A DNA stretch of 63,990 bases, filler included, from Octopus bimaculoides (Eukaryota): assembly GCF_001194135.2 (NCBI RefSeq). It is 5 parts of 5 records of this genome, joined end to end, with 100 filler letters (N's around TTAATTAATTAA, not from the genome) between each part and the next. Parts side by side here need not be neighbours in the genome. Positions count along the whole stretch, not along the records: positions 1 to 25,977 come from NC_068986.1; 4 more parts are not named here. One strand, 5' to 3'. The stretch's first letter is position 1; the number at the start of each line of letters is the position of its first letter. The translations under genes were made by a program, and so were the position numbers. The notes beneath the pieces were generated by a model. It saw only the letters and a program-made list of their open reading frames with translations. It was not told the origin of the DNA and did not search any database. This document shows positions 3,757 to 25,257 of the stretch, in pieces.

Positions 3757-4936
3757 ATCATCATCATCATCATCATCAACGTCCATTGTCCACCCTGGCA
3801 TGGGTTGGGAGGTGTGACCAGAGCTGTCAGGCTGGGGAGCTGCAATAGACCCCCAATCTGATTTGGCACGATTTCTACGGTTGGATGCTCTTCCTAACGC
3901 CAACCACTTTACAGTGTGCTGGGTGTTCTTACGTGGCACCACGGGGGGGGGGGCTTTTACGTGGAACCAACATGAATGCTTTTCACCATCAGAGGGACCA
4001 GTCTTAATATTTCTGCTGTGAGGTATGGGTCTTCTTGAGCACAGCAAGGCACCAGGCATCTTGGCCCTTTGTCATCTCACCTGAAAGGTTCAGCATCCTG
4101 AAGACATTCTTTTGTACTTCATCCCATTTACTTCAAGAGATAGGCATTTCTTATTGAGATATCAGCATCCATCCACACCACATGACCAAACCAGCACAGT
4201 CTTCTCTCTGGCACACAGCAACCAATTCCTCTTATGCCTAACTTCTCTTTCAAAACACTAGCACTCTGTCAAACATGTACACTTACATTACACATCCAGC
4301 AGAGCATACTATCGTCATTCCTTTCTAACCTTTGCATGTCCTCTGCATTCAGGGCCCATGTCTCACCACCCTGTAGAATTTCTGTCTCTATTAATGCATC
4401 ATACAATCTTCCTTTCACTCGGAGAGAGAACCATTTCGTGGCCAACAGAGGTAACAGCTCTCTGAATTTCCTCCATCCTGTTCTTATTCTAGCTATCACA
4501 CTCTCTGCTCATCCTCCCCATCTACTAATTTGATCCCCTATATAGCAGAAGTTATCTACTACCTCTAATGTACCACCAGGGCATTTGAGAGAATCAATTT
4601 CCCTTGGCTCTACAGTTTTTATGGATCTTGTGCATCTTCCACATATGAAAATTATCTTCTCTGATAACTTTCCTATTAATCCACTGCACTTCTTGTGTGT
4701 CCATAGCTTACACTGGATACACCGCATGGAGTTCCTGCCTACACCTTTCCTACAAATCGAACAGGGCCACCTACCTGAGGGGGGGGGGTAGAGTCCCATC
4801 AGTTTTCTTGCTCACTAGGACCTTAGTCTTTGCTAAATTAACCTTAAAGCCCTTAGATACCAGGTTTTGCTTCCACCCTTGGAATTTCTCTTCTAGCTCT
4901 GATATGGAATCTGCTATGAGGGCAAGATCATCAGCA
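3757..4936 (-). mobile_element. RTE-clade LINE, 5'-truncated, frameshifted ORF2 with PHD finger, ATG-repeat tail
   Basis: Peptides ADDLALIAD...GFKVNLAKTK, CSIC..CIQC..HKKC..CGRC, LEVVDNFCYIGD, ARIRTGWRKFRELLPLL and ETWAL..RLERND; 3' tail CAT/ATG repeat. Confidence 0.85.
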
Positions 4937-4956
4937 CACACACACACACACACACA

Positions 4957-5308
4957 CATCATAAATGTCTGCTTTCCATGCTGGCATGGGTTGGATGGCT
5001 TCACTGAAAACCGGTAAGCTGGGGAGCTGCACCAGGTGCCAAAATGAGTTGGCATTTGCAAAAAAGTTCTTTGATGTGGTGCATATGTGTTATGTTTGGG
5101 ACGTTTTTAGTGTGCATGTGTGTGTGTGTGTGTGTGTGTATGTGCAAGTGCATCCCACTCTTATCATTTAACATCCATTGTCCATGCTAGCATAGGTTGG
5201 ACAGTTTGACCAGGGCTGACAAGCTGGGTGGGCTGCACTAGACACCAGTCTGATTTGGCATGATTTCTAGGGCTGGATACCCTTCCTAATGCCAACCACT
5301 CCGTGAGT
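4957..5308 (-). mobile_element. Two truncated RTE 3'-tail copies
   Basis: Shared tail core CCATGCTRGCATGGGTTGGA...GGATGCCCTTCCTAA..CCAACCACTC. Confidence 0.75.
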
Positions 5309-5446: not shown

Positions 5447-6281
5447 ATAAAGTGTAGTATATTGCCACTTAAGTGTGGCTGACCCCTAGGGGTGGATGTT
5501 ACTGTTGCTTTTAGCCCCAGGAGGACATCTCCTCCAGCTGGCTTATCGACACACGACTGTGTCCTGTTTGCCAAGGGAGTTATCCCTCTCACCACGACCA
5601 GCAGCACGAACGTATCCGGATTTCAGGGTTATTTCCCTTCTTCGGCGTTCGACAGCTGATGACCTTGGTGAGAGAGAAAAACCTGGCAAAATCTTATATC
5701 TTCTTTTCCAGTGACATTCTTCACTGATATTGAAAAGGTGAAAACAAGCAATGTTAATTCTCTAAATGAAGTATTAACAGTAACTGCACGATAAAGTGTA
5801 GTATATTGCCACTTAAGTGTGNNNNNNNNNNNNNNNNNNNNNNNNNNNNNNNNNNNNNNNNNNNNNNNNNNNNNNNNNNNNNNNNNNNNNNNNNNNNNNN
5901 NNNNNNNNNNNNNNNNNNNNNNNNNNNNNNNNNNNNNNNNNNNNNNNNNNNNNNNNNNNNNNNNNNNNNNNNNNNNNNNNNNNNNNNNNNNNNNNNNNNN
6001 NNNNNNNNNNNNNNNNNNNNNNNNNNNNNNNNNNNNNNNNNNNNNNNNNNNNNNNNNNNNNNNNNCCTGAAATCCGGATACGTTCGTGCTGCTGGTCGTG
6101 GTGAGAGGGATAACTCCCTTGGCAAACAGGACACAGTCGTGTGTCGATAAGCCAGCTGGAGGAGATGTCCTCCTGGGGCTAAAAGCAACAGTAACATCCA
6201 CCCCTAGGGGTCAGCCACACTTAAGTGGCAATATACTACACTTTATCGTGCAGTTACTGTTAATACTTCATTTAGAGAATT

Positions 6282-9099: not shown

Positions 9100-10305
9100 C
9101 AACACACCCTGACTTTCAGTTTTATCAACATTGCAAAAGTGGGCAGCTGAATTTAGGAGCAGGGAAATGACCCAACATTTGGATGTCCTACAACTGCCAC
9201 CTACAAGGACAACATTGATCATATTCACCATATTGTGATGGACGACAGGTGATTAGCTATAAATCAAATAGTCAATGCTATTAGCATATCCTGTGAGAGC
9301 GTTGAGGATATTCTGCACTATGAACTCAGCATGATGAAAGTTTCCGCTTGGCGGGTGCCACATCTTCTGACACCTGGTTAAAAGCGCACCAGGTTGATCA
9401 CATCATGGGAAAATCTGACATTGTTTGAGGCAGATCGAGCTGATGCTGGTTTCCTTGAAATGTTTTCTAAGCTAGGATGAGTGTTGGCTTCATCATCGTT
9501 TAACGTCCGCTTTCCATGCTAGCATGGGTTGGACGATTTGACTGAGGACTGGTGGACCAGGAGGCGACACCAGGCTCCAATCTGATTTGGCAGAGTTTCT
9601 ACAGCTGGATGCCCTTCCTAACACCAACCACTCCGAGAGTGTAGGGGGTGCTTTTACATGTCACCCGCACGAAAGGCCAGTCAGGCGGTACTGGCATCTA
9701 CCACACTCAAAATGGTGTATTTTATGTGCCACCTGCACAAGAGCCAGTCCAGGGGCACTGGCATTCATCATTTTGAGCCAGAGACAAAGAAACAATCCAT
9801 GCAGTGGAAACACCTTTCCTTATCTGCTCCAAAGAAGGGCAAGTTTATTTCATCTGCAGGGAAGGTGAAGGCCTCAGCTTTTTGGGATGCAAAAGGCATT
9901 GTGTTTATTGACTATCTCCAGAAGGGTCATACCATCAATGGAGAGTACTAGGCGAACATGCCGAGACAGTTACGAAAGACTATCAAGCTCAAATGCCTAG
10001 AAAAACTACTGAAAGGGGTCTTGTTTCATTTGGACAATGCTCCAGCATGGAAATCTTGCTTTCAATGGCTGCTGTGCATGACTGGCTTTGAACTGGTTGA
10101 TCACCCTCCTTATTCTCCTGATTTGGCCCCAGCTCACTATCATCTATTTCCCAACATGAAAAAAAAAAACCGCTTGGCTAGGAACCAATATTGCAGTGAT
10201 GATGACGTCATATCTGCTGTTGATGACTGTTTTTGACCAACGGGATGAAAGCTTCTTCACCAATGGGATCCAAGCACTGCAACACTGATGGAAGAAGTGT
10301 GTTGA
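9100..10305 (+). mobile_element. Mariner transposase pseudogene, interrupted by an RTE tail at 9497-9763
   Basis: MMKVSAWRVPHLLT (WVPHEL-like), HHFEPETKKQSMQWKH, FWDAKGIVFIDYLQKGHTINGEY, FHLDNAPA, HPPYSPDLAP; multiple stops. Confidence 0.9.
9497..9763 (-). mobile_element. RTE 3'-tail insertion with target-site duplication
   Basis: Flanked by TTCATCAT at 9489-9496 and 9764-9771. Confidence 0.85.
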
Positions 10306-14552: not shown

Positions 14553-15599
14553 TTTTGCTTACTTTTTCTGATAAGTTGCAGTGCGTCTCAGCACTGTGTA
14601 CAACAAGTTTATTATTATTCAAATAATTCACAAAAAATTAATAAGCCTCTATACTGCATTCAATATTCTACAAATAGTTGCTAAATCTCCTTCAAATCAC
14701 ACCCTGCTATCTTTAAAAAATGTGAAGGGCACATTGGATCATGTACTCCCATATGTGCAAGGCATTGAAAGAAAAGTTGTTTGTTCTGCTGGAGCTTTTC
14801 ATCATAGATCTCCTCAACTAGGGCTCACCTGGGTTACACATCTTCATAATTCACTTGATCCATTTACTATTAAATATGTCGTCTCCCACCCAATTACCAA
14901 AGGGTGGAAGGCTTTTACAATTTAAAACAACTTCTGTTTATAATTTTATTTATTAATAATACAGTATTATATATATTTATTTTTGTTGATTATCCCCACC
15001 TGAACGGTAAAAGGTATTTCAAGAGTACTGAAACAAGGGAGCTTACTCAACATCAATCAAGATTTTGATGTCACTAGAAGAGGTTTAGGACAAAAAGAGG
15101 CAGGTTTTTATTCTTTTATTTGTTTCACCGCCTTGTTTGTTGACGATAGATAAATAAAGAATAATAATGAACTTGTTGTTTACCAGTGCTCAGGTGTGTG
15201 ACAGAATCACTTTGAAAGTAAAGGATGTTTACAAAAGAATATGGAATGATTCAAAGTCAAAGGGAATATGAAGGACGAGCTGGATTCTGACAGAGATAGC
15301 AATCAGAAATTTAATTATTCAGAATGTCAACAGAATGAGATTGGATATTTGGAAAATAGGGTCGCTGGGAACCCAGGATATAGCAGAAGAACTGGAAAAA
15401 GAGTAGCTTTGAATTAGAACCATCTTTGAAAATAATAAGCAAGTGACCCAACAATGTACCAAGGGTTTTTCTGTTTTTGTTGAGACCCAGGTCAGCCCTA
15501 TCAATGATAGTTTACCTTTAGGGGGAATCTTCTGTATATCAAGGACAAGAATATATTGGATATTCTTTATGTAAATTTATGTAAAATAGTAGTGAGTGG

Positions 15600-15977
15600 T
15601 TTGAAGGAAATTTGGTTACTAGAGTAATAGTGAGAGAAATGTGTGGAGTGAAGTTGTTTGATAAGAGGAGGACAGAGGACTTGATGGGGATGCTGGGGTT
15701 GGAGGAAACGGTGGAACGGCTGGCAAGGGTGAATGGAGTGTGGTGGTATGGGCATGTTCTGAGGAGGGTGCTTGAGTTTGAGGTAAATGGACCAAGAAAG
15801 CGAGGTAGACCGAAGAAAACGTGGAGAGGACAGGTGGAGGAGGAGATTGGGAGGGTTGGCTTGAGAAGGGAGGACGCCCAACACTGGGCAAGATGGCGAA
15901 ATGGTGTGAGGGCAGTTGCTATGGCATTGAGGTAGATCCGGCCACCCCTGTTAAAACACTGGATGACGATGATGATG
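15600..15977 (+). mobile_element. RTE-clade LINE 3' end (a different family)
   Basis: MCGVKLFDKRRTEDLMGMLGL...WYGHVLRR..GPRKRGRPKKTW...WRNGV, then a GATGA-repeat tail. Confidence 0.8.
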
Positions 15978-16303
15978 AGTTCTAGTGGGATGAATGCTCA
16001 CACGTAGGCTTGTGTGTCCAGATATACTAAATGATATGACATTTTGTACAGTTAGATGACTGAGGTTATCGACATATTTTAGTAAATGCTGCCAGCAGCA
16101 AATGAAGAGGATATAAAGGAATTCTGAAAACTTAGAAATTTAAGGAGATAATGATGGTAATTATTATCTGTTGACAAGTTGCATTTAAATACTGTGAATG
16201 AACAGGATGCCATTTTCTCAAATGGAGAGGCGCAGTTTTAGTAACCTACCAGTGACATTATGCTGGTCACTCAAGACATTAAAAAAATATATATTTCTAC
16301 TTC

Positions 16304-16345
16304 ACTTACCTGACAAGAGAGCAGTTAAGGGGGGTTAGAGAGAAC
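16304..16345 (-). other. Strong 3' splice site directly followed by GTAAGT (recursive site or start of a short exon)
   Basis: The minus strand reads CTCGTTCTCTCTAACCCCCCTTAACTGCTCTCTTGTCAG|GTAAGT, with a branch-like CTAAC and no other AG for about 100 nt upstream. Confidence 0.5.
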
Positions 16346-16551
16346 GAGGGGGAGAAGACAATCCAATGATATAATGATAGCAGGTAAGTTCAGTGGGATT
16401 TGATGGTCTAAAAAGATGCAATTGGATGTTTTTAAAAGAGAATGATAATAATCTTCATGTAATTATGATTAAATTGTTTTTGCAATTCATTAAATCACTC
16501 AAAACACTTTTCATACAGTTTCTAATAAGTTATAAAATCATGATAACTTAC

Positions 16552-18282
16552 CTCAAAGGTGTTGCCATCACAAGAAGCAAAAAAACCTTCCCACAAGCTA
16601 CAATGTTGTTTGTCCTTTGGTAACAGCACAACTAGATTGCTAGGTGACACGTCCGTCTCATTAGTAGGACATACTGAGCAGCCCTGGTGGAATTCAATAT
16701 AGAGACGATAATACAATGGAAAACAGCCAGAGCCTTGAGAAGAGAACATTATGTCATAGAGGTGAGGTTCTGGGTGTTTTTGGACAATACTATTTGAAAG
16801 GACATTAGCAACATCAATGACAAAGGTGACTGCTTCTTGATCTTGGAAATAGCGAAAATTAGGAAGCTGGCACAGTGGCAAGAAAAACAAAGAATTTGAG
16901 TTGTCCTCATCTATACCCGTTTCAGGAATCATAGCAACATCATTTGGCTGTACGTTGGCATCATCATTTTCTTGGACAGAAATCTCTGAATCACATTGTT
17001 CAGAACCTTCATCTACTGAGTTGCCTCGATCTACATCAGCTTCATTGTCACTTGAAGTTGCATAACTGGGAATTGAACTAAAAGGTAGATTCTCCGGCTG
17101 AGCAGCAATCACAGGAAGTATCACATTTAATACACTTTTACACTTATCAAATTTGGCAGTGCCATTAGCTTCGTCAACTGGATATGGTAACTTCAGATCC
17201 AGTTCATATGATGCTGGGGTTGTACACTTCAACATAATGTGATTATCAACAATATCTAAATCAATGGTATTTGCAGATCTCAATAGAGGCAAGTCAATAG
17301 ATACAACAAGTTCTTTGGGTCTGGTACTAGACTTTGCATCAGAGACGTTTGAAAAGTCTTGGATATCTAGTGCAGAACGATGTAAAATACAATACTTGGG
17401 AACGACAGGGGAACTTGGAAGGGTTGAGGATTCTGTGGAGACGGTTGTTCTTTCAGTCTGGTCCTCCTGTAATGTTTCTTTGGATTCAGTTTCTGATTTT
17501 GAGGATTTTGTCTCTGACGTATCTTTCTTCTTAGCTTCAGCTAGTCTCTTGGACGAGCGTGTTTTACCTTTTTTTTCCACCCATTCCTTAGTTAATTCTT
17601 TGGTTGTCTTATTAGGGTCATATGGATAAGGCATACTGTTCAAAATGCTGTCAGAGTCGTCTGCGGTTTTGGTCGATCCACTTTCTCGCCGGGTTCGAAT
17701 CACAGTAGGAGTTCTAACTCCTTTGAAATTGTTTTTCACTTTGGGTGTACTTATCTTTTTATCCAGTGTGACACTAAAATGTTCCTCAATTGCTTCTATC
17801 GCTGTATCGTGTACTAGCTTTTTAAATTTAGAGTTAGACTGTGCCATTCGGTAAGTGTCTGGGTGAAACACGACATCATACACAAAGCATTTTTCACCTT
17901 TGAGATCGAAGTCTTCGCGAGGTCTAGCTAAAGAATGGGGGATTGCCCAGTTGATTCCAAAACGGTCAGGGCCATTCTCTTTAGTAAATGTTGGCTTCCC
18001 AATGTTTTCATTTTTGCAGATATTTATAAAAGCCTTTTTCTTGTTATTAATAAGTGATTTTATAACATGGCCTGGTTCAGGAGTAATGAATTTTATATCC
18101 ATACCTCTTTCATTTTCTAGTTGTGTAATCTCCTCTTCATACTTTTTGCGGTTTTCGGGATTTGATATTTCTTCGGCATACTCTGCGAGTAATTTTCTGA
18201 ATTCTTCCTTTTTCATCGCCTCCCCAAACCGTTTCATCTCTTCTGGAGTCATATCGAGCTTCTTGCGATCTTCCCCAGACAT
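16552..18282 (-). CDS. DNAAF2: Protein kintoun / dynein axonemal assembly factor 2, first coding exon (577 codons, ends in phase 0)
   Basis: The 586-aa ORF starts MSGEDRKKLDMTPEEMKRFGEAMKKEEFRKLLAEYAEEISNPENRKKYEEEI, the typical kintoun N-terminus. It contains PIH1 motifs (EPGHVIK, FINIC, DVVFHPD) and CS-like domains (PKELVVSIDLPLL...YELDLKLPYPVDEANGTAKFDK). A perfect donor GAG|GTAAGT at 16552/16551 means the last 9 ORF residues are probably intronic. Confidence 0.93.
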
Positions 18283-24074: not shown

Positions 24075-25257
24075 ACATCATCATCATCATCGTTTAACGT
24101 CCGCTTTCCATGCTAGCATGGGTTGGACGATTTGACTGAGGACTGGTGAAACCGGATGGCAACACCAGGCTCCAATCTAATTTGGCAGAGTTTCTACAGC
24201 TGGATGCCCTTCCTAATGCCAACCACTCAGAGAGTGTAGTGGGTGCTTTTACGTGTCACCCGCACGAAAACGGCCACGCTCGAAATGGTGTCTTTTATGT
24301 GCCACCCGCACAAGCCAGTCCAGGGGCACTGGCAACGATCTCACTCGAAAATCCTACGGGAGCCAGTCAGGCGGTACTGGCAACNNNNNNNNNNNNNNNN
24401 NNNNNNNNNNNNNNNNNNNNNNNNNNNNNNNNNNNNNNNNNNNNNNNNNNNNNNNNNNNNNNNNNNNNNNNNNNNNNNNNNNNNNNNNNNNNNNNNNNNN
24501 NNNNNNNNNNNNNNNNNNNNNNNNNNNNNNNNNNNNNNNNNNNNNNNNNNNNNNNNNNNNNNNNNNNNNNNNNNNNNNNNNNNNNNNNNNNNNNNNNNNN
24601 NNNNNNNNNNNNNNNNNNNNNNNNNNNNNNNNNNNNNNNNNNNNNNNNNNNNNNNNNNNNNNNNNNNNNNNNNNNNNNNNNNNNNNNNNNNNNNNNNNNN
24701 NNNNNNNNNNNNNNNNNNNNNNNNNNNNNNNNNNNNNNNNNNNNNNNNNNNNNNNNNNNNNNNNNNNNNNNNNNNNNNNNNNNNNNNNNNNNNNNNNNNN
24801 NNNNNNNNNNNNNNNNNNNNNNNNNNNNNNNNNNNNNNNNNNNNNNNNNNNNNNNNNNNNNNNNNNNNNNNNNNNNNNNNNNNNNNNNNNNNNNNNNNNN
24901 NNNNNNNNNNNNATGGCTGTTCGTACGCATGCGTCATACAGTCTGCCTTTTACTCTGAGTGAGAGTCCCTTTGTCGCCAGCAGGGGTAAGAGCTCTCTAA
25001 ACTTTGCCCAGGCTATTCTTATTCTAGCAGCTACACTTTCAGCGCACCCACCCCCACTACTAACTTGGTCGCCCAGATAGCGGAAGCTATCGACTACCTC
25101 TAGTTTTTCACCCTGGAATGAGATAGAAGTTGTTTCCTGTTTGTTTACAGTCTTTATTGCACCTGAACATCTGCCACAAACAAAAACTAACTTGCTAGTT
25201 AACCTGCCTTTGATGTTGCTGCACCTCTTATGTGTCCATAGCTTGCACCGGGCACAT
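24075..25257 (-). mobile_element. RTE LINE copy spanning an N gap; PHD and RT C-terminal part in frame
   Basis: CARCKLWTHKRCSNIKGRLTSKLVFVCGRC...EKLEVVDSFRYLGDQVSSGGGC...AWAKFRELLPLLATKGLSLRVKGRLYDACVRT, plus the tail at 24075-24384. Confidence 0.88.

What the first reader, a model, noticed from the sequence alone, without database searches (positions are those of the whole stretch)
16304..16389. Candidate recursive splice site in DNAAF2 intron 1, with a cis U1-mimic that can pair with it
Seen: 242 nt after the exon 1 donor, the minus strand reads CTAAC (branch-like A about 26 nt upstream), a pyrimidine tract, then CAG|GTAAGT, with no other AG for about 100 nt. This is the juxtaposed 3'ss/5'ss architecture of recursive (ratchet) sites. 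Also seen: 68 nt upstream in the same pre-mRNA is ACUUACCUG (16389-16381). That is the exact complement of CAGGUAAGU and equals nt 3-11 of U1 snRNA. Inference: a 9-bp stem could hide the regenerated donor and switch between recursive splicing and use as a short terminal exon (VSEVEIYIFLMS*), which would truncate kintoun. The + strand reading of the same 9-mer is also a donor (16383/16384), so an antisense exon is an alternative.
Basis: partly seen in the sequence, partly recalled or inferred. Interest (0 to 1): 0.72.

Follow-up and report, generated by a model that had tools for sequence, protein, structure and literature searches.

The report
Recursive-type splice motif in kintoun intron
A perfect back-to-back acceptor/donor splice motif, with a nearby sequence complementary to it, sits 242 bases into the long first intron of a mollusc cilia-assembly gene (kintoun/DNAAF2), but nothing available shows it is used or conserved, and part of the proposed mechanism cannot work as stated.

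Summary
On the minus strand, kintoun/DNAAF2 exon 1 ends GAG|GTAAGT at 16552/16551. An 83%-pyrimidine tract with CTAAC and TTAAC follows, then CAG|GTAAGT at 16310/16309, with no other AG for 98 nt. ACTTACCTG lies 68 nt upstream of that 9-mer. The motif is rare: about 0.002 are expected per window, and the exact complement adds roughly 1e-3.

- The complement lies inside the first 242-nt segment. It leaves with the first lariat, so it cannot hide the regenerated donor. It could only mask the acceptor AG and the donor before step 1.
- It is really a 10-mer, AACUUACCUG, which also pairs 9 bp with the authentic exon-1 donor. Predicted pairing flips between the two donors depending on the length of RNA folded.
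- There is no AATAAA or ATTAAA for about 1 kb, so the terminal-exon idea is weak.
- A better anatomical fit is a ratchet point plus a 60-nt cryptic exon (16309-16250, in-frame TGA) ending at a weaker donor, CTG|GTAGGT.

Nine orthologous introns show no such site and no such complement. No close relatives and no RNA data were reachable. Verdict: a real and unusual motif, a plausible candidate, function unproven.

The parts
16552..18282 (-). Kintoun/DNAAF2 exon 1, coding part (ATG at 18282, last codon GAG at 16554-16552, phase 0)
   Evidence: Pfam PIH1 and PIH1_CS. 681 homologues, and those with names are called kintoun / dynein assembly factor 2. Nine orthologous loci have the exon end at the same position.
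16546..16554 (-). Authentic exon-1 donor D1, GAG|GTAAGT (junction 16552/16551)
   Evidence: Orthologues have L[EQ]|GT at the same codon.
16526..16550 (-). Small local hairpin over D1: UAAGUUAU (16550-16543) paired with AUAACUUA (16533-16526)
   Evidence: Centroid fold. Hairpin energy -6.4 kcal/mol. Pairing probability 0.05-0.79 depending on context.
16381..16390 (-). Element M, AACUUACCUG. Nt 16389-16381 are complementary to the candidate donor D2 (9 bp). Nt 16390-16382 are complementary to D1, AGGUAAGUU (9 bp). On the + strand the same bases read CAG|GTAAGTT.
   Evidence: Duplex energy -11.6 kcal/mol.
16313..16360 (-). Polypyrimidine tract (83% C/T) holding the branch-like CTAAC (A at 16335) and TTAAC (A at 16325)
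   Evidence: AG-free zone of 98 nt.
16304..16312 (-). Juxtaposed acceptor/donor D2, CAG|GTAAGT (junction 16310/16309): the candidate ratchet point
   Evidence: Expected by chance 0.0005-0.016 per window.
16250..16309 (-). Candidate cryptic RS-exon, 60 nt, with an in-frame TGA at 16273-16271 (VSEVEIYIFLMS*VTSIMSL)
   Evidence: The architecture matches the 'ratchet point + ~50-nt cryptic RS-exon' model in PMC8605326. Inferred only, with no RNA evidence.
16244..16252 (-). Weaker downstream donor CTG|GTAGGT (junction 16250/16249), which would close the cryptic RS-exon
   Evidence: It matches the consensus at 7 of 9 positions, against 9 of 9 for D2.

Best explanation
The site is a lineage-specific cryptic ratchet-type splice site at the very start of a long (16.5 kb or more) first intron of kintoun.

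Proposed course, all inferred:
1. The strong acceptor at 16310 lies at a distance (242 nt) that favours pairing of splice sites across a short intron. It is transcribed minutes before the real exon-2 acceptor, so some transcripts splice exon 1 to it.
2. That step recreates GAG|GUAAGU, the same 9-mer context as the original donor.
3. The recreated donor outcompetes the weaker GUAGGU donor 60 nt downstream. The rest of the intron is then removed and the mRNA is unchanged.
4. If the weaker donor wins, a 60-nt exon carrying a stop codon is included, which would truncate the protein or trigger nonsense-mediated decay.

The 242-nt segment does not usefully subdivide the intron. So this is more likely a tolerated, self-correcting cryptic site than a needed ratchet.

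The complement AACUUACCUG, if it acts at all, acts before step 1. By pairing with CAG|GUAAGU it would hide both the acceptor AG and the donor, lowering use of the site. It can pair equally well with the authentic exon-1 donor. It cannot regulate the regenerated donor, because it leaves with the first lariat.

Shown here: the sequence anatomy, its rarity, and the predicted pairings. Inferred: every splicing step.
For: - Perfect donor, 83% pyrimidine tract, consensus branch motif and a 98-nt AG-free zone.
- It is the best AG|GTRAG site of 15 in the window.
- Expected by chance 0.0005-0.016 per window.
- The host intron is 16.5 kb or longer. An HMM that finds exon 2 in four other molluscs finds none here.
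- A 60-nt cryptic exon with a weaker downstream donor and a stop codon fits the published model. In that model the ratchet-point donor is stronger than the RS-exon donor, and the cryptic exon is about 50 nt with poor coding content (PMC8605326).
- Recursive splicing has been reported over a range of intron sizes, and as a stochastic minor pathway (PMC10156609).
- The 9-bp stem appears in the MFE and centroid folds of local contexts.
Against: - No RNA evidence of any kind could be obtained.
- No close relatives were found in the protein database (best hit 59% identity) or in the metagenome contigs, so conservation could not be tested at a useful distance.
- Nine orthologous introns lack any such site near the intron start.
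- The 242-nt first segment is far below the 2,596-bp minimum in flies, and position -5 is G rather than the near-invariant TT at -5/-6 (10.1101/006163).
- Five other strong acceptor-like sites lie on the same strand in this intron, so acceptor-like motifs alone are common decoys.
- The local fold is not unusually stable: z = -0.8 for 111 nt and +1.0 for 361 nt.
- The stem's predicted occupancy falls to 0.02 in 900-nt contexts.
Confidence: 0.38

Rival explanations
1. Chance motif, never or negligibly used. The acceptor/donor juxtaposition and its complement are coincidences in an AT-rich, unconstrained intron flank, selected after the fact by a scan of many windows.
For: - The motif was defined after it was seen.
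- A 2-3 Gb genome should hold hundreds of sites of this quality by chance (0.002 per 26 kb) and about one with an exact complement nearby.
- 9-bp inverted repeats are common: about 20 in the window.
- Nine orthologous introns show neither feature.
- Another CAG|GTAGGT with a C-rich tract lies in the same intron inside a LINE fragment at 4775/4774. This shows that such motifs arise without function.
- Folding energy is not exceptional.
- The position, 242 nt from the donor, does nothing to subdivide the intron.
Against: - The joint probability per window is about 1e-5 to 1e-6.
- A strong acceptor 242 nt from a strong donor, followed by two usable donors, meets the usual sequence requirements for recognition. 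Complete silence would need active repression.
Confidence: 0.38
2. Regulated poison or alternative exon. The acceptor at 16310 opens a real exon. That exon is either the 60-nt cassette 16309-16250 or a longer terminal exon. Its inclusion ends the reading frame after VSEVEIYIFLMS and gives a truncated kintoun or a transcript degraded by nonsense-mediated decay.
For: - In-frame TGA at 16273-16271, and a downstream donor CTG|GTAGGT.
- Cryptic RS-exons are known to be included when the ratchet-point donor loses the competition (PMC8605326).
Against: - There is no AATAAA or ATTAAA until 15315, about 1 kb downstream and beyond a transposon fragment.
- The perfect donor at the exon's first base should normally win over GUAGGU.
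- There is no transcript evidence.
Confidence: 0.08
3. Antisense-strand donor. CAG|GTAAGTT at 16381-16390 on the + strand is the real 5' splice site of a non-coding antisense exon. That exon would be the purine-rich stretch 16313-16383. The complementarity seen in the kintoun pre-mRNA would then be a by-product of two donors facing each other.
For: - A perfect donor on the + strand.
- It is preceded by about 70 nt of GA-rich, enhancer-like sequence, the complement of the pyrimidine tract.
Against: - The + strand site has only 40% pyrimidines upstream and an AG 3 nt away, so no acceptor-like context accompanies it.
- All three + strand frames are closed across 16304-16383 (read from the sequence).
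- There is no evidence for a + strand transcript. The only + strand ORF nearby (15612-15935) looks like a repeat-derived fragment but has no Pfam match, so its nature was not established.
Confidence: 0.05
4. Competing-structure switch. The single element AACUUACCUG pairs either with the authentic donor D1 or with the downstream twin D2, and so decides which GUAAGU is offered to U1. This would gate productive splicing against unproductive splicing (use of D2 after retention of the 242 nt, or use of the ratchet site).
For: - Nine base pairs are possible with each donor.
- The predicted ensembles partition between the two pairings and flip with context.
Against: - The ninth pair with D1 costs only a 1-in-4 coincidence once the pairing with D2 exists.
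- No orthologue has any complement to its donor.
- There is no covariation data.
- U1 snRNP binding (-14.4 kcal/mol for the RNA duplex alone) probably outcompetes a stem closed by a 68-155-nt loop.
Confidence: 0.05

Closest known systems
Drosophila intronic ratchet points / zero-nucleotide-exon recursive splicing (Hatton 1998; Burnette 2005; Duff 2015; Pai 2018; Joseph 2018, 2021)
   Same: - Juxtaposed strong 3'ss and 5'ss around AG|GT, with a prominent pyrimidine tract.
- A long host intron.
- A short cryptic RS-exon (60 nt here, about 50 nt in flies) with a weaker downstream donor and non-coding content.
   Different: - The first segment is 242 nt. In flies the range is 2,596-63,580 bp, and sites tend to sit near intron midpoints.
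- Positions -6/-5 read TG rather than the TT found in 99.5% of fly sites.
- Conservation and RNA intermediates are defining evidence in flies and are unavailable here.
- No recursive splicing has been described in cephalopods or other molluscs. The single paper found in the library search was unrelated.
Vertebrate RS-exons (Sibley 2015; Blazquez 2018)
   Same: The RS site is recognised through exon definition with a downstream 5'ss. Competition between the reconstituted donor and the RS-exon donor decides between skipping and inclusion of a stop-containing exon.
   Different: The vertebrate high-confidence sites lie deep in introns longer than 150 kb. The annotated RS-exons are normal included exons protected by the exon junction complex. 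Neither matches a site 242 nt from the donor.
Splice-site-masking stems (MAPT exon 10 5'ss stem-loop; SMN2 exon 7 TSL2, PMC1802598)
   Same: An intramolecular helix covers the GU and its flanking positions, and so competes with U1 snRNA for the donor.
   Different: - The known stems are short-range hairpins of a few nucleotides' loop. They are conserved and validated by mutation.
- Here the loop is 68 nt, or about 155 nt for the pairing with the exon-1 donor.
- The helix also buries the acceptor AG.
- One arm is removed by the first splicing step.
- There is no conservation evidence.
Competing long-range RNA pairings in splice choice (Dscam docking/selector sites, 14-3-3zeta; established knowledge)
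   Same: One element has two mutually exclusive complementary partners.
   Different: The known cases select among acceptor-side exon variants and show strong conservation and covariation. Here the two partners are alike simply because both are consensus donors.

Membership tests
Recursive splice site / ratchet point | Juxtaposed functional 3'ss and 5'ss motifs around a central AG|GT | tested here: met
   YAG|GTAAGT with 80-83% pyrimidines upstream, CTAAC 25 nt upstream and a 98-nt AG-free zone. This establishes the motif only, not its use.
Recursive splice site / ratchet point | Lies in a long intron (flies: 11.3 kb or more) | tested here: met
   No exon 2 was found in the 16.5 kb downstream, using tblastn and an HMM that detects exon 2 in four other molluscs. 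The intron's full length is unknown because the window ends.
Recursive splice site / ratchet point | Divides the intron into sizeable segments (flies: 2.6-64 kb, near midpoints) | tested here: not met
   The first segment is 242 nt, against a minimum of 2,596 bp (10.1101/006163) and a tendency toward midpoints (PMC6110457).
Recursive splice site / ratchet point | TT at positions -5/-6 (a fly-specific signature, 99.5% of sites) | tested here: not met
   Positions -8 to -1 read CTTGTCAG, so -6 is T and -5 is G. This may not apply outside insects.
Recursive splice site / ratchet point | Cryptic RS-exon with a weaker downstream donor | tested here: met
   16309-16250 (60 nt, with an in-frame TGA), closed by CTG|GTAGGT. 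This is sequence evidence only.
Recursive splice site / ratchet point | Splicing intermediates: exon-to-ratchet-point junction reads, recursive lariats, sawtooth coverage | not testable with these tools
   No RNA-seq access. The protein collection holds no sequence closer than 59% identity, so no transcript contigs of this lineage exist in it.
Recursive splice site / ratchet point | Evolutionary conservation of the AG|GT motif | tested here: inconclusive
   The site is absent from nine orthologous introns. The nearest of these is 59% identical at the protein level and its introns cannot be aligned. No congeneric sequence was found.
Splice-site-masking RNA stem | A thermodynamically favoured helix covering the splice site | tested here: inconclusive
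   The stem is present in the MFE and centroid folds. Its probability is 0.85-0.99 in contexts of 361 nt or less, but 0.02 at 901 nt, and it competes with the pairing to the exon-1 donor. The z-scores are unremarkable.
Splice-site-masking RNA stem | Conservation or covariation of both arms | not testable with these tools
   No alignable relatives. Distant orthologues have no complement of 7 nt or more to their donor within 400 nt.
Alternative terminal exon | A polyadenylation signal shortly downstream of the stop codon | tested here: not met
   No AATAAA or ATTAAA on the minus strand between 16309 and 15316. The first is ATTAAA at 15315.

The most novel reading that the evidence does not exclude
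A single cis element, AACUUACCUG, acts as an intramolecular stand-in for the 5' end of U1. It toggles between two identical donors 242 nt apart: the authentic exon-1 donor and a proximal ratchet-point donor. This would gate entry into a recursive or poison-exon pathway and so tune kintoun output. It would be the first recursive splice site described in a mollusc, and the first reported with a built-in structural switch.
Probability: 0.04. Interest if true: 0.65.

Novelty: new member of a known kind. Interest (0 to 1): 0.3.

Why it matters
If the site is used, it would extend recursive splicing to lophotrochozoans. It would also be an extreme case, a ratchet point only 242 nt from the donor. 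That position bears on whether such sites exist to subdivide long introns or are simply self-correcting cryptic exons that selection tolerates.

The complementary 10-mer would offer a compact natural test of how RNA structure competes with U1 and U2AF at a combined acceptor/donor.

If the site is not used, it is a useful caution. Perfect-looking splice motifs and 9-bp complements do arise by chance in AT-rich introns of large genomes.

Tried and rejected
- **U1 snRNA pseudogene or other known RNA at 15800-16900.** An Rfam scan at E up to 10 gave only sub-threshold noise.
- **Transposon or MITE with 9-bp terminal inverted repeats.** Region 15950-16551 has no other copy in the window or in L001. 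The helix does not extend beyond 9 bp. Only a 2-bp 'GA' flank matches. Rejected.
- **Local duplication of the exon-1 donor.** There is no similarity beyond the 8-9-nt consensus. Rejected.
- **Real exon 2 starting at 16309.** The frame closes after 12 codons, and the sequence does not match the conserved E[RK]LF[LV]T..NLQ start of exon 2 in other molluscs.
- **Exon 2 elsewhere in the window.** tblastn with six full-length mollusc kintouns, tblastx against L001 and an HMM of the C-terminal region found nothing.
- **Search for close relatives.** The protein search gave a best hit of 59% identity. A protein-guided scan of the metagenome contigs found nothing. A degenerate DNA pattern of the exon-1 end plus donor also found nothing. 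Conservation within the genus therefore could not be tested.
- **Conservation of the architecture in nine orthologous loci.** Negative.
- **Literature on recursive splicing in cephalopods.** The search returned one unrelated paper.

Full report
**1. What is there**

Read on the minus strand, the window carries a 1.73-kb open reading frame, 18282-16522. It has a PIH1 N-terminal domain (E 3.6e-56) and a PIH1 CS-like domain (E 1.4e-27). It has 681 homologues, and those with names are called kintoun or dynein assembly factor 2.

The best homologue is only 59% identical (P0001, an unnamed ENA contig). All the others are 36-50% identical molluscs, brachiopods, annelids and nemerteans. The gene assignment is therefore secure.

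The frame leaves coding sequence at GAG|GTAAGT (16552/16551, phase 0). Nine orthologous loci fetched for comparison (L001-L009) all have a GT immediately after the homologous L-E/Q codon. So this is a conserved intron position and a genuine donor.

**2. The observation**

- The first 242 nt of the intron (16551-16310) end in a 48-nt tract that is 83% pyrimidine (16360-16313).
- The tract holds CTAAC (A at 16335, 25 nt before the AG) and TTAAC (A at 16325).
- CAG|GTAAGT follows at 16312-16304.
- The previous AG is 98 nt upstream.
- ACTTACCTG lies at 16389-16381, leaving a 68-nt loop.
- Read in phase 0, the sequence after the junction gives VSEVEIYIFLMS*.

**3. Is it more than chance?**

- CAGGTAAGT occurs exactly twice in the window on both strands together, and these are the two arms. 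Shuffles give a mean of 0.28.
- Of 15 AG|GTRAG sites in the window, this one stands alone for pyrimidine content and AG-free zone.
- First-order Markov simulations give 0.0005 sites of this quality per window, 0.0155 under a looser definition and 0.13 under a very loose one.
- An estimate that respects the real patchiness of the sequence agrees. The window has 10 strong acceptor-like YAGs, and multiplying by the observed GTAAGT frequency gives 0.002.
- Nine-base inverted repeats with loops up to 100 nt are ordinary, with about 20 non-simple ones in the window. One that covers precisely this 9-mer has a probability of about 1e-3.
- About 50 GTRAGT sites were examined in the window and L001. Apart from the two copies of this inverted repeat and the exon-1 donor, whose 9-nt complement is the same element, no other site outside GT microsatellites has a complement of 9 nt.

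The joint event is thus about 1e-5 to 1e-6 per window. That is impressive for one window. However, the pattern was defined after it was seen, and a genome of 2-3 Gb would hold about one such combination, and hundreds of bare motifs, by chance.

The same intron holds another CAG|GTAGGT behind a C-rich tract at 4775/4774, inside a LINE fragment. It also holds five more strong acceptor-like sites on the same strand. Splice-like decoys are clearly present.

**4.

*(a) Topology.* The complementary arm lies upstream of the acceptor, inside the first 242-nt segment. Once exon 1 is joined to 16309, that arm is in the excised lariat. It cannot 'hide the regenerated donor' in cis. It can act only before the first step, and there the helix would bury the acceptor AG (CAG pairs with CUG) as well as the GU. 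That is, it would silence the site rather than switch its outcome.

*(b) The element is a 10-mer.* AACUUACCUG (16390-16381) also pairs 9 bp with the authentic exon-1 donor AGGUAAGUU (16553-16545). Ensemble folding shows the two pairings competing and flipping with the length of RNA folded:
- the pairing with the candidate donor D2 ranges from 0.02 to 0.66;
- the pairing with the exon-1 donor D1 ranges from 0.09 to 0.91;
- D1 also has a small hairpin of its own, UAAGUUAU/AUAACUUA.

Local folds containing the stem are not unusually stable: z = -0.8 for 111 nt and +1.0 for 361 nt.

*(c) The terminal-exon idea.* No AATAAA or ATTAAA occurs on the minus strand until 15315, about 1 kb away and beyond a repeat-like stretch of unestablished nature.

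*(d) A closer anatomical fit.* The published 'ratchet point plus cryptic RS-exon' model fits better. 16309-16250 is a 60-nt exon with an in-frame TGA (16273-16271), closed by a weaker donor CTG|GTAGGT. Joseph et al. describe cryptic RS-exons of about 50 nt with poor coding content, whose inclusion is prevented because the ratchet-point donor is stronger than the RS-exon donor (PMC8605326).

*(e) 'Equals U1 nt 3-11'* is true of any perfect complement of the consensus donor. Rfam finds no U1-like gene here.

**5. The host intron**

No exon 2 could be found in the 16.5 kb downstream, using tblastn with six full-length mollusc kintouns, tblastx against L001 or an HMM of the C-terminal region. The same HMM finds exon 2 at 2.6-5.5 kb in four other molluscs, with E from 1e-6 to 1e-15.

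The intron is therefore at least 16.5 kb and runs off the window. It is full of transposon debris: a mariner-type transposase fragment at 9658-9951, and a reverse transcriptase plus PHD-like finger at 4509-5061. The 570 nt next to exon 1, including the site, are unique in the window.

**6. Comparative test**

None of the nine orthologous introns has an acceptor/donor juxtaposition near its start. None has a complement of 7 nt or more to its exon-1 donor within 400 nt. The nearest of them (59% protein identity) shares no alignable intron sequence with the window.

The architecture is therefore not an ancient feature of the gene. Whether it is conserved among close relatives could not be tested, because two metagenome scans found nothing.

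**7. Comparison with known systems**

Against the Drosophila ratchet-point definition, three features are met: the motif, the long host intron and the cryptic RS-exon.

Two features are not met.
- Segment size is 242 nt, against a reported range of 2,596-63,580 bp with a tendency toward intron midpoints (10.1101/006163; PMC6110457).
- The TT at -5/-6, present in 99.5% of fly sites, is TG here.

Splicing intermediates and conservation, the evidence that actually defines the class, are untestable here. Human lariat data suggest that recursive splicing also occurs over a range of intron sizes, sometimes as a stochastic minor route (PMC10156609). A proximal site is therefore not excluded.

The stem resembles donor-masking hairpins such as MAPT exon 10 or SMN2 TSL2 (PMC1802598, listed). 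It has a much larger loop, no conservation evidence, and an arm that is spliced away.

**8. Verdict**

The motif is real, precisely described and statistically unusual. I rate two readings about equally.
- A tolerated, self-correcting cryptic ratchet site, used in some transcripts: 0.38.
- An inert coincidence: 0.38.

Smaller shares go to a poison or terminal exon (0.08), an antisense-strand donor (0.05) and a two-donor structural switch (0.05).

Because the 242-nt segment does nothing to shorten the intron, even genuine use would more likely be neutral than necessary. Interest is modest (0.3) until RNA evidence or close-species conservation is obtained.

Noticed in passing
window 16526-16550 (-): The authentic exon-1 donor sits in its own small hairpin, UAAGUUAU/AUAACUUA with a 9-nt loop (-6.4 kcal/mol). 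Its predicted probability is 0.05-0.79 depending on context.
   Followed up: partly
window 4766-4805 (-), junction 4775/4774: A second recursive-type motif lies in the same intron: CCCCCCCCCCTCAG|GTAGGT. It sits inside a LINE-derived ORF (PHD-like finger / reverse transcriptase fragments at 4509-5061), which shows that transposons can seed such motifs.
   Followed up: partly
window 15619, 14357, 12555, 10803, 7273 (-): Five further strong acceptor-like sites lie on the sense strand of the intron (YAG, at least 80% pyrimidines, AG-free zone of 40 nt or more). None is followed by a donor. They are decoy acceptors.
   Followed up: no
window 9658-10236 (+) and 4509-5061 (-); also 15612-15935 (+): Transposon debris fills the intron: a mariner-type transposase fragment (Pfam Transposase_1, E 7e-14), and a non-LTR reverse transcriptase plus PHD-like finger. 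The repeated peptide motif LQLDALPNTNHSESVVGAF recurs in several places (about 9590, 10435, 20700, 24150).
   Followed up: partly
window 5822-6065 and 24385-24912: Two runs of N (244 and 528 nt), which are assembly gaps. The sequence is a scaffold, so distances across the gaps are estimates.
   Followed up: no
L002-L004, L006 compared with window and L001: Intron 1 of kintoun is 2.6-5.5 kb in four non-cephalopod-like molluscs. It is at least 16.5 kb in the window and at least 10 kb in its closest relative (L001), so the intron has expanded greatly in this lineage.
   Followed up: partly
window 16095-16110 (-): In folds of 900 nt or more, the candidate donor region CAGGUAAGUGAAG pairs instead with CUUCAUUUGCUG about 200 nt downstream (probability 0.8-0.97). 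This is a third competing partner.
   Followed up: no
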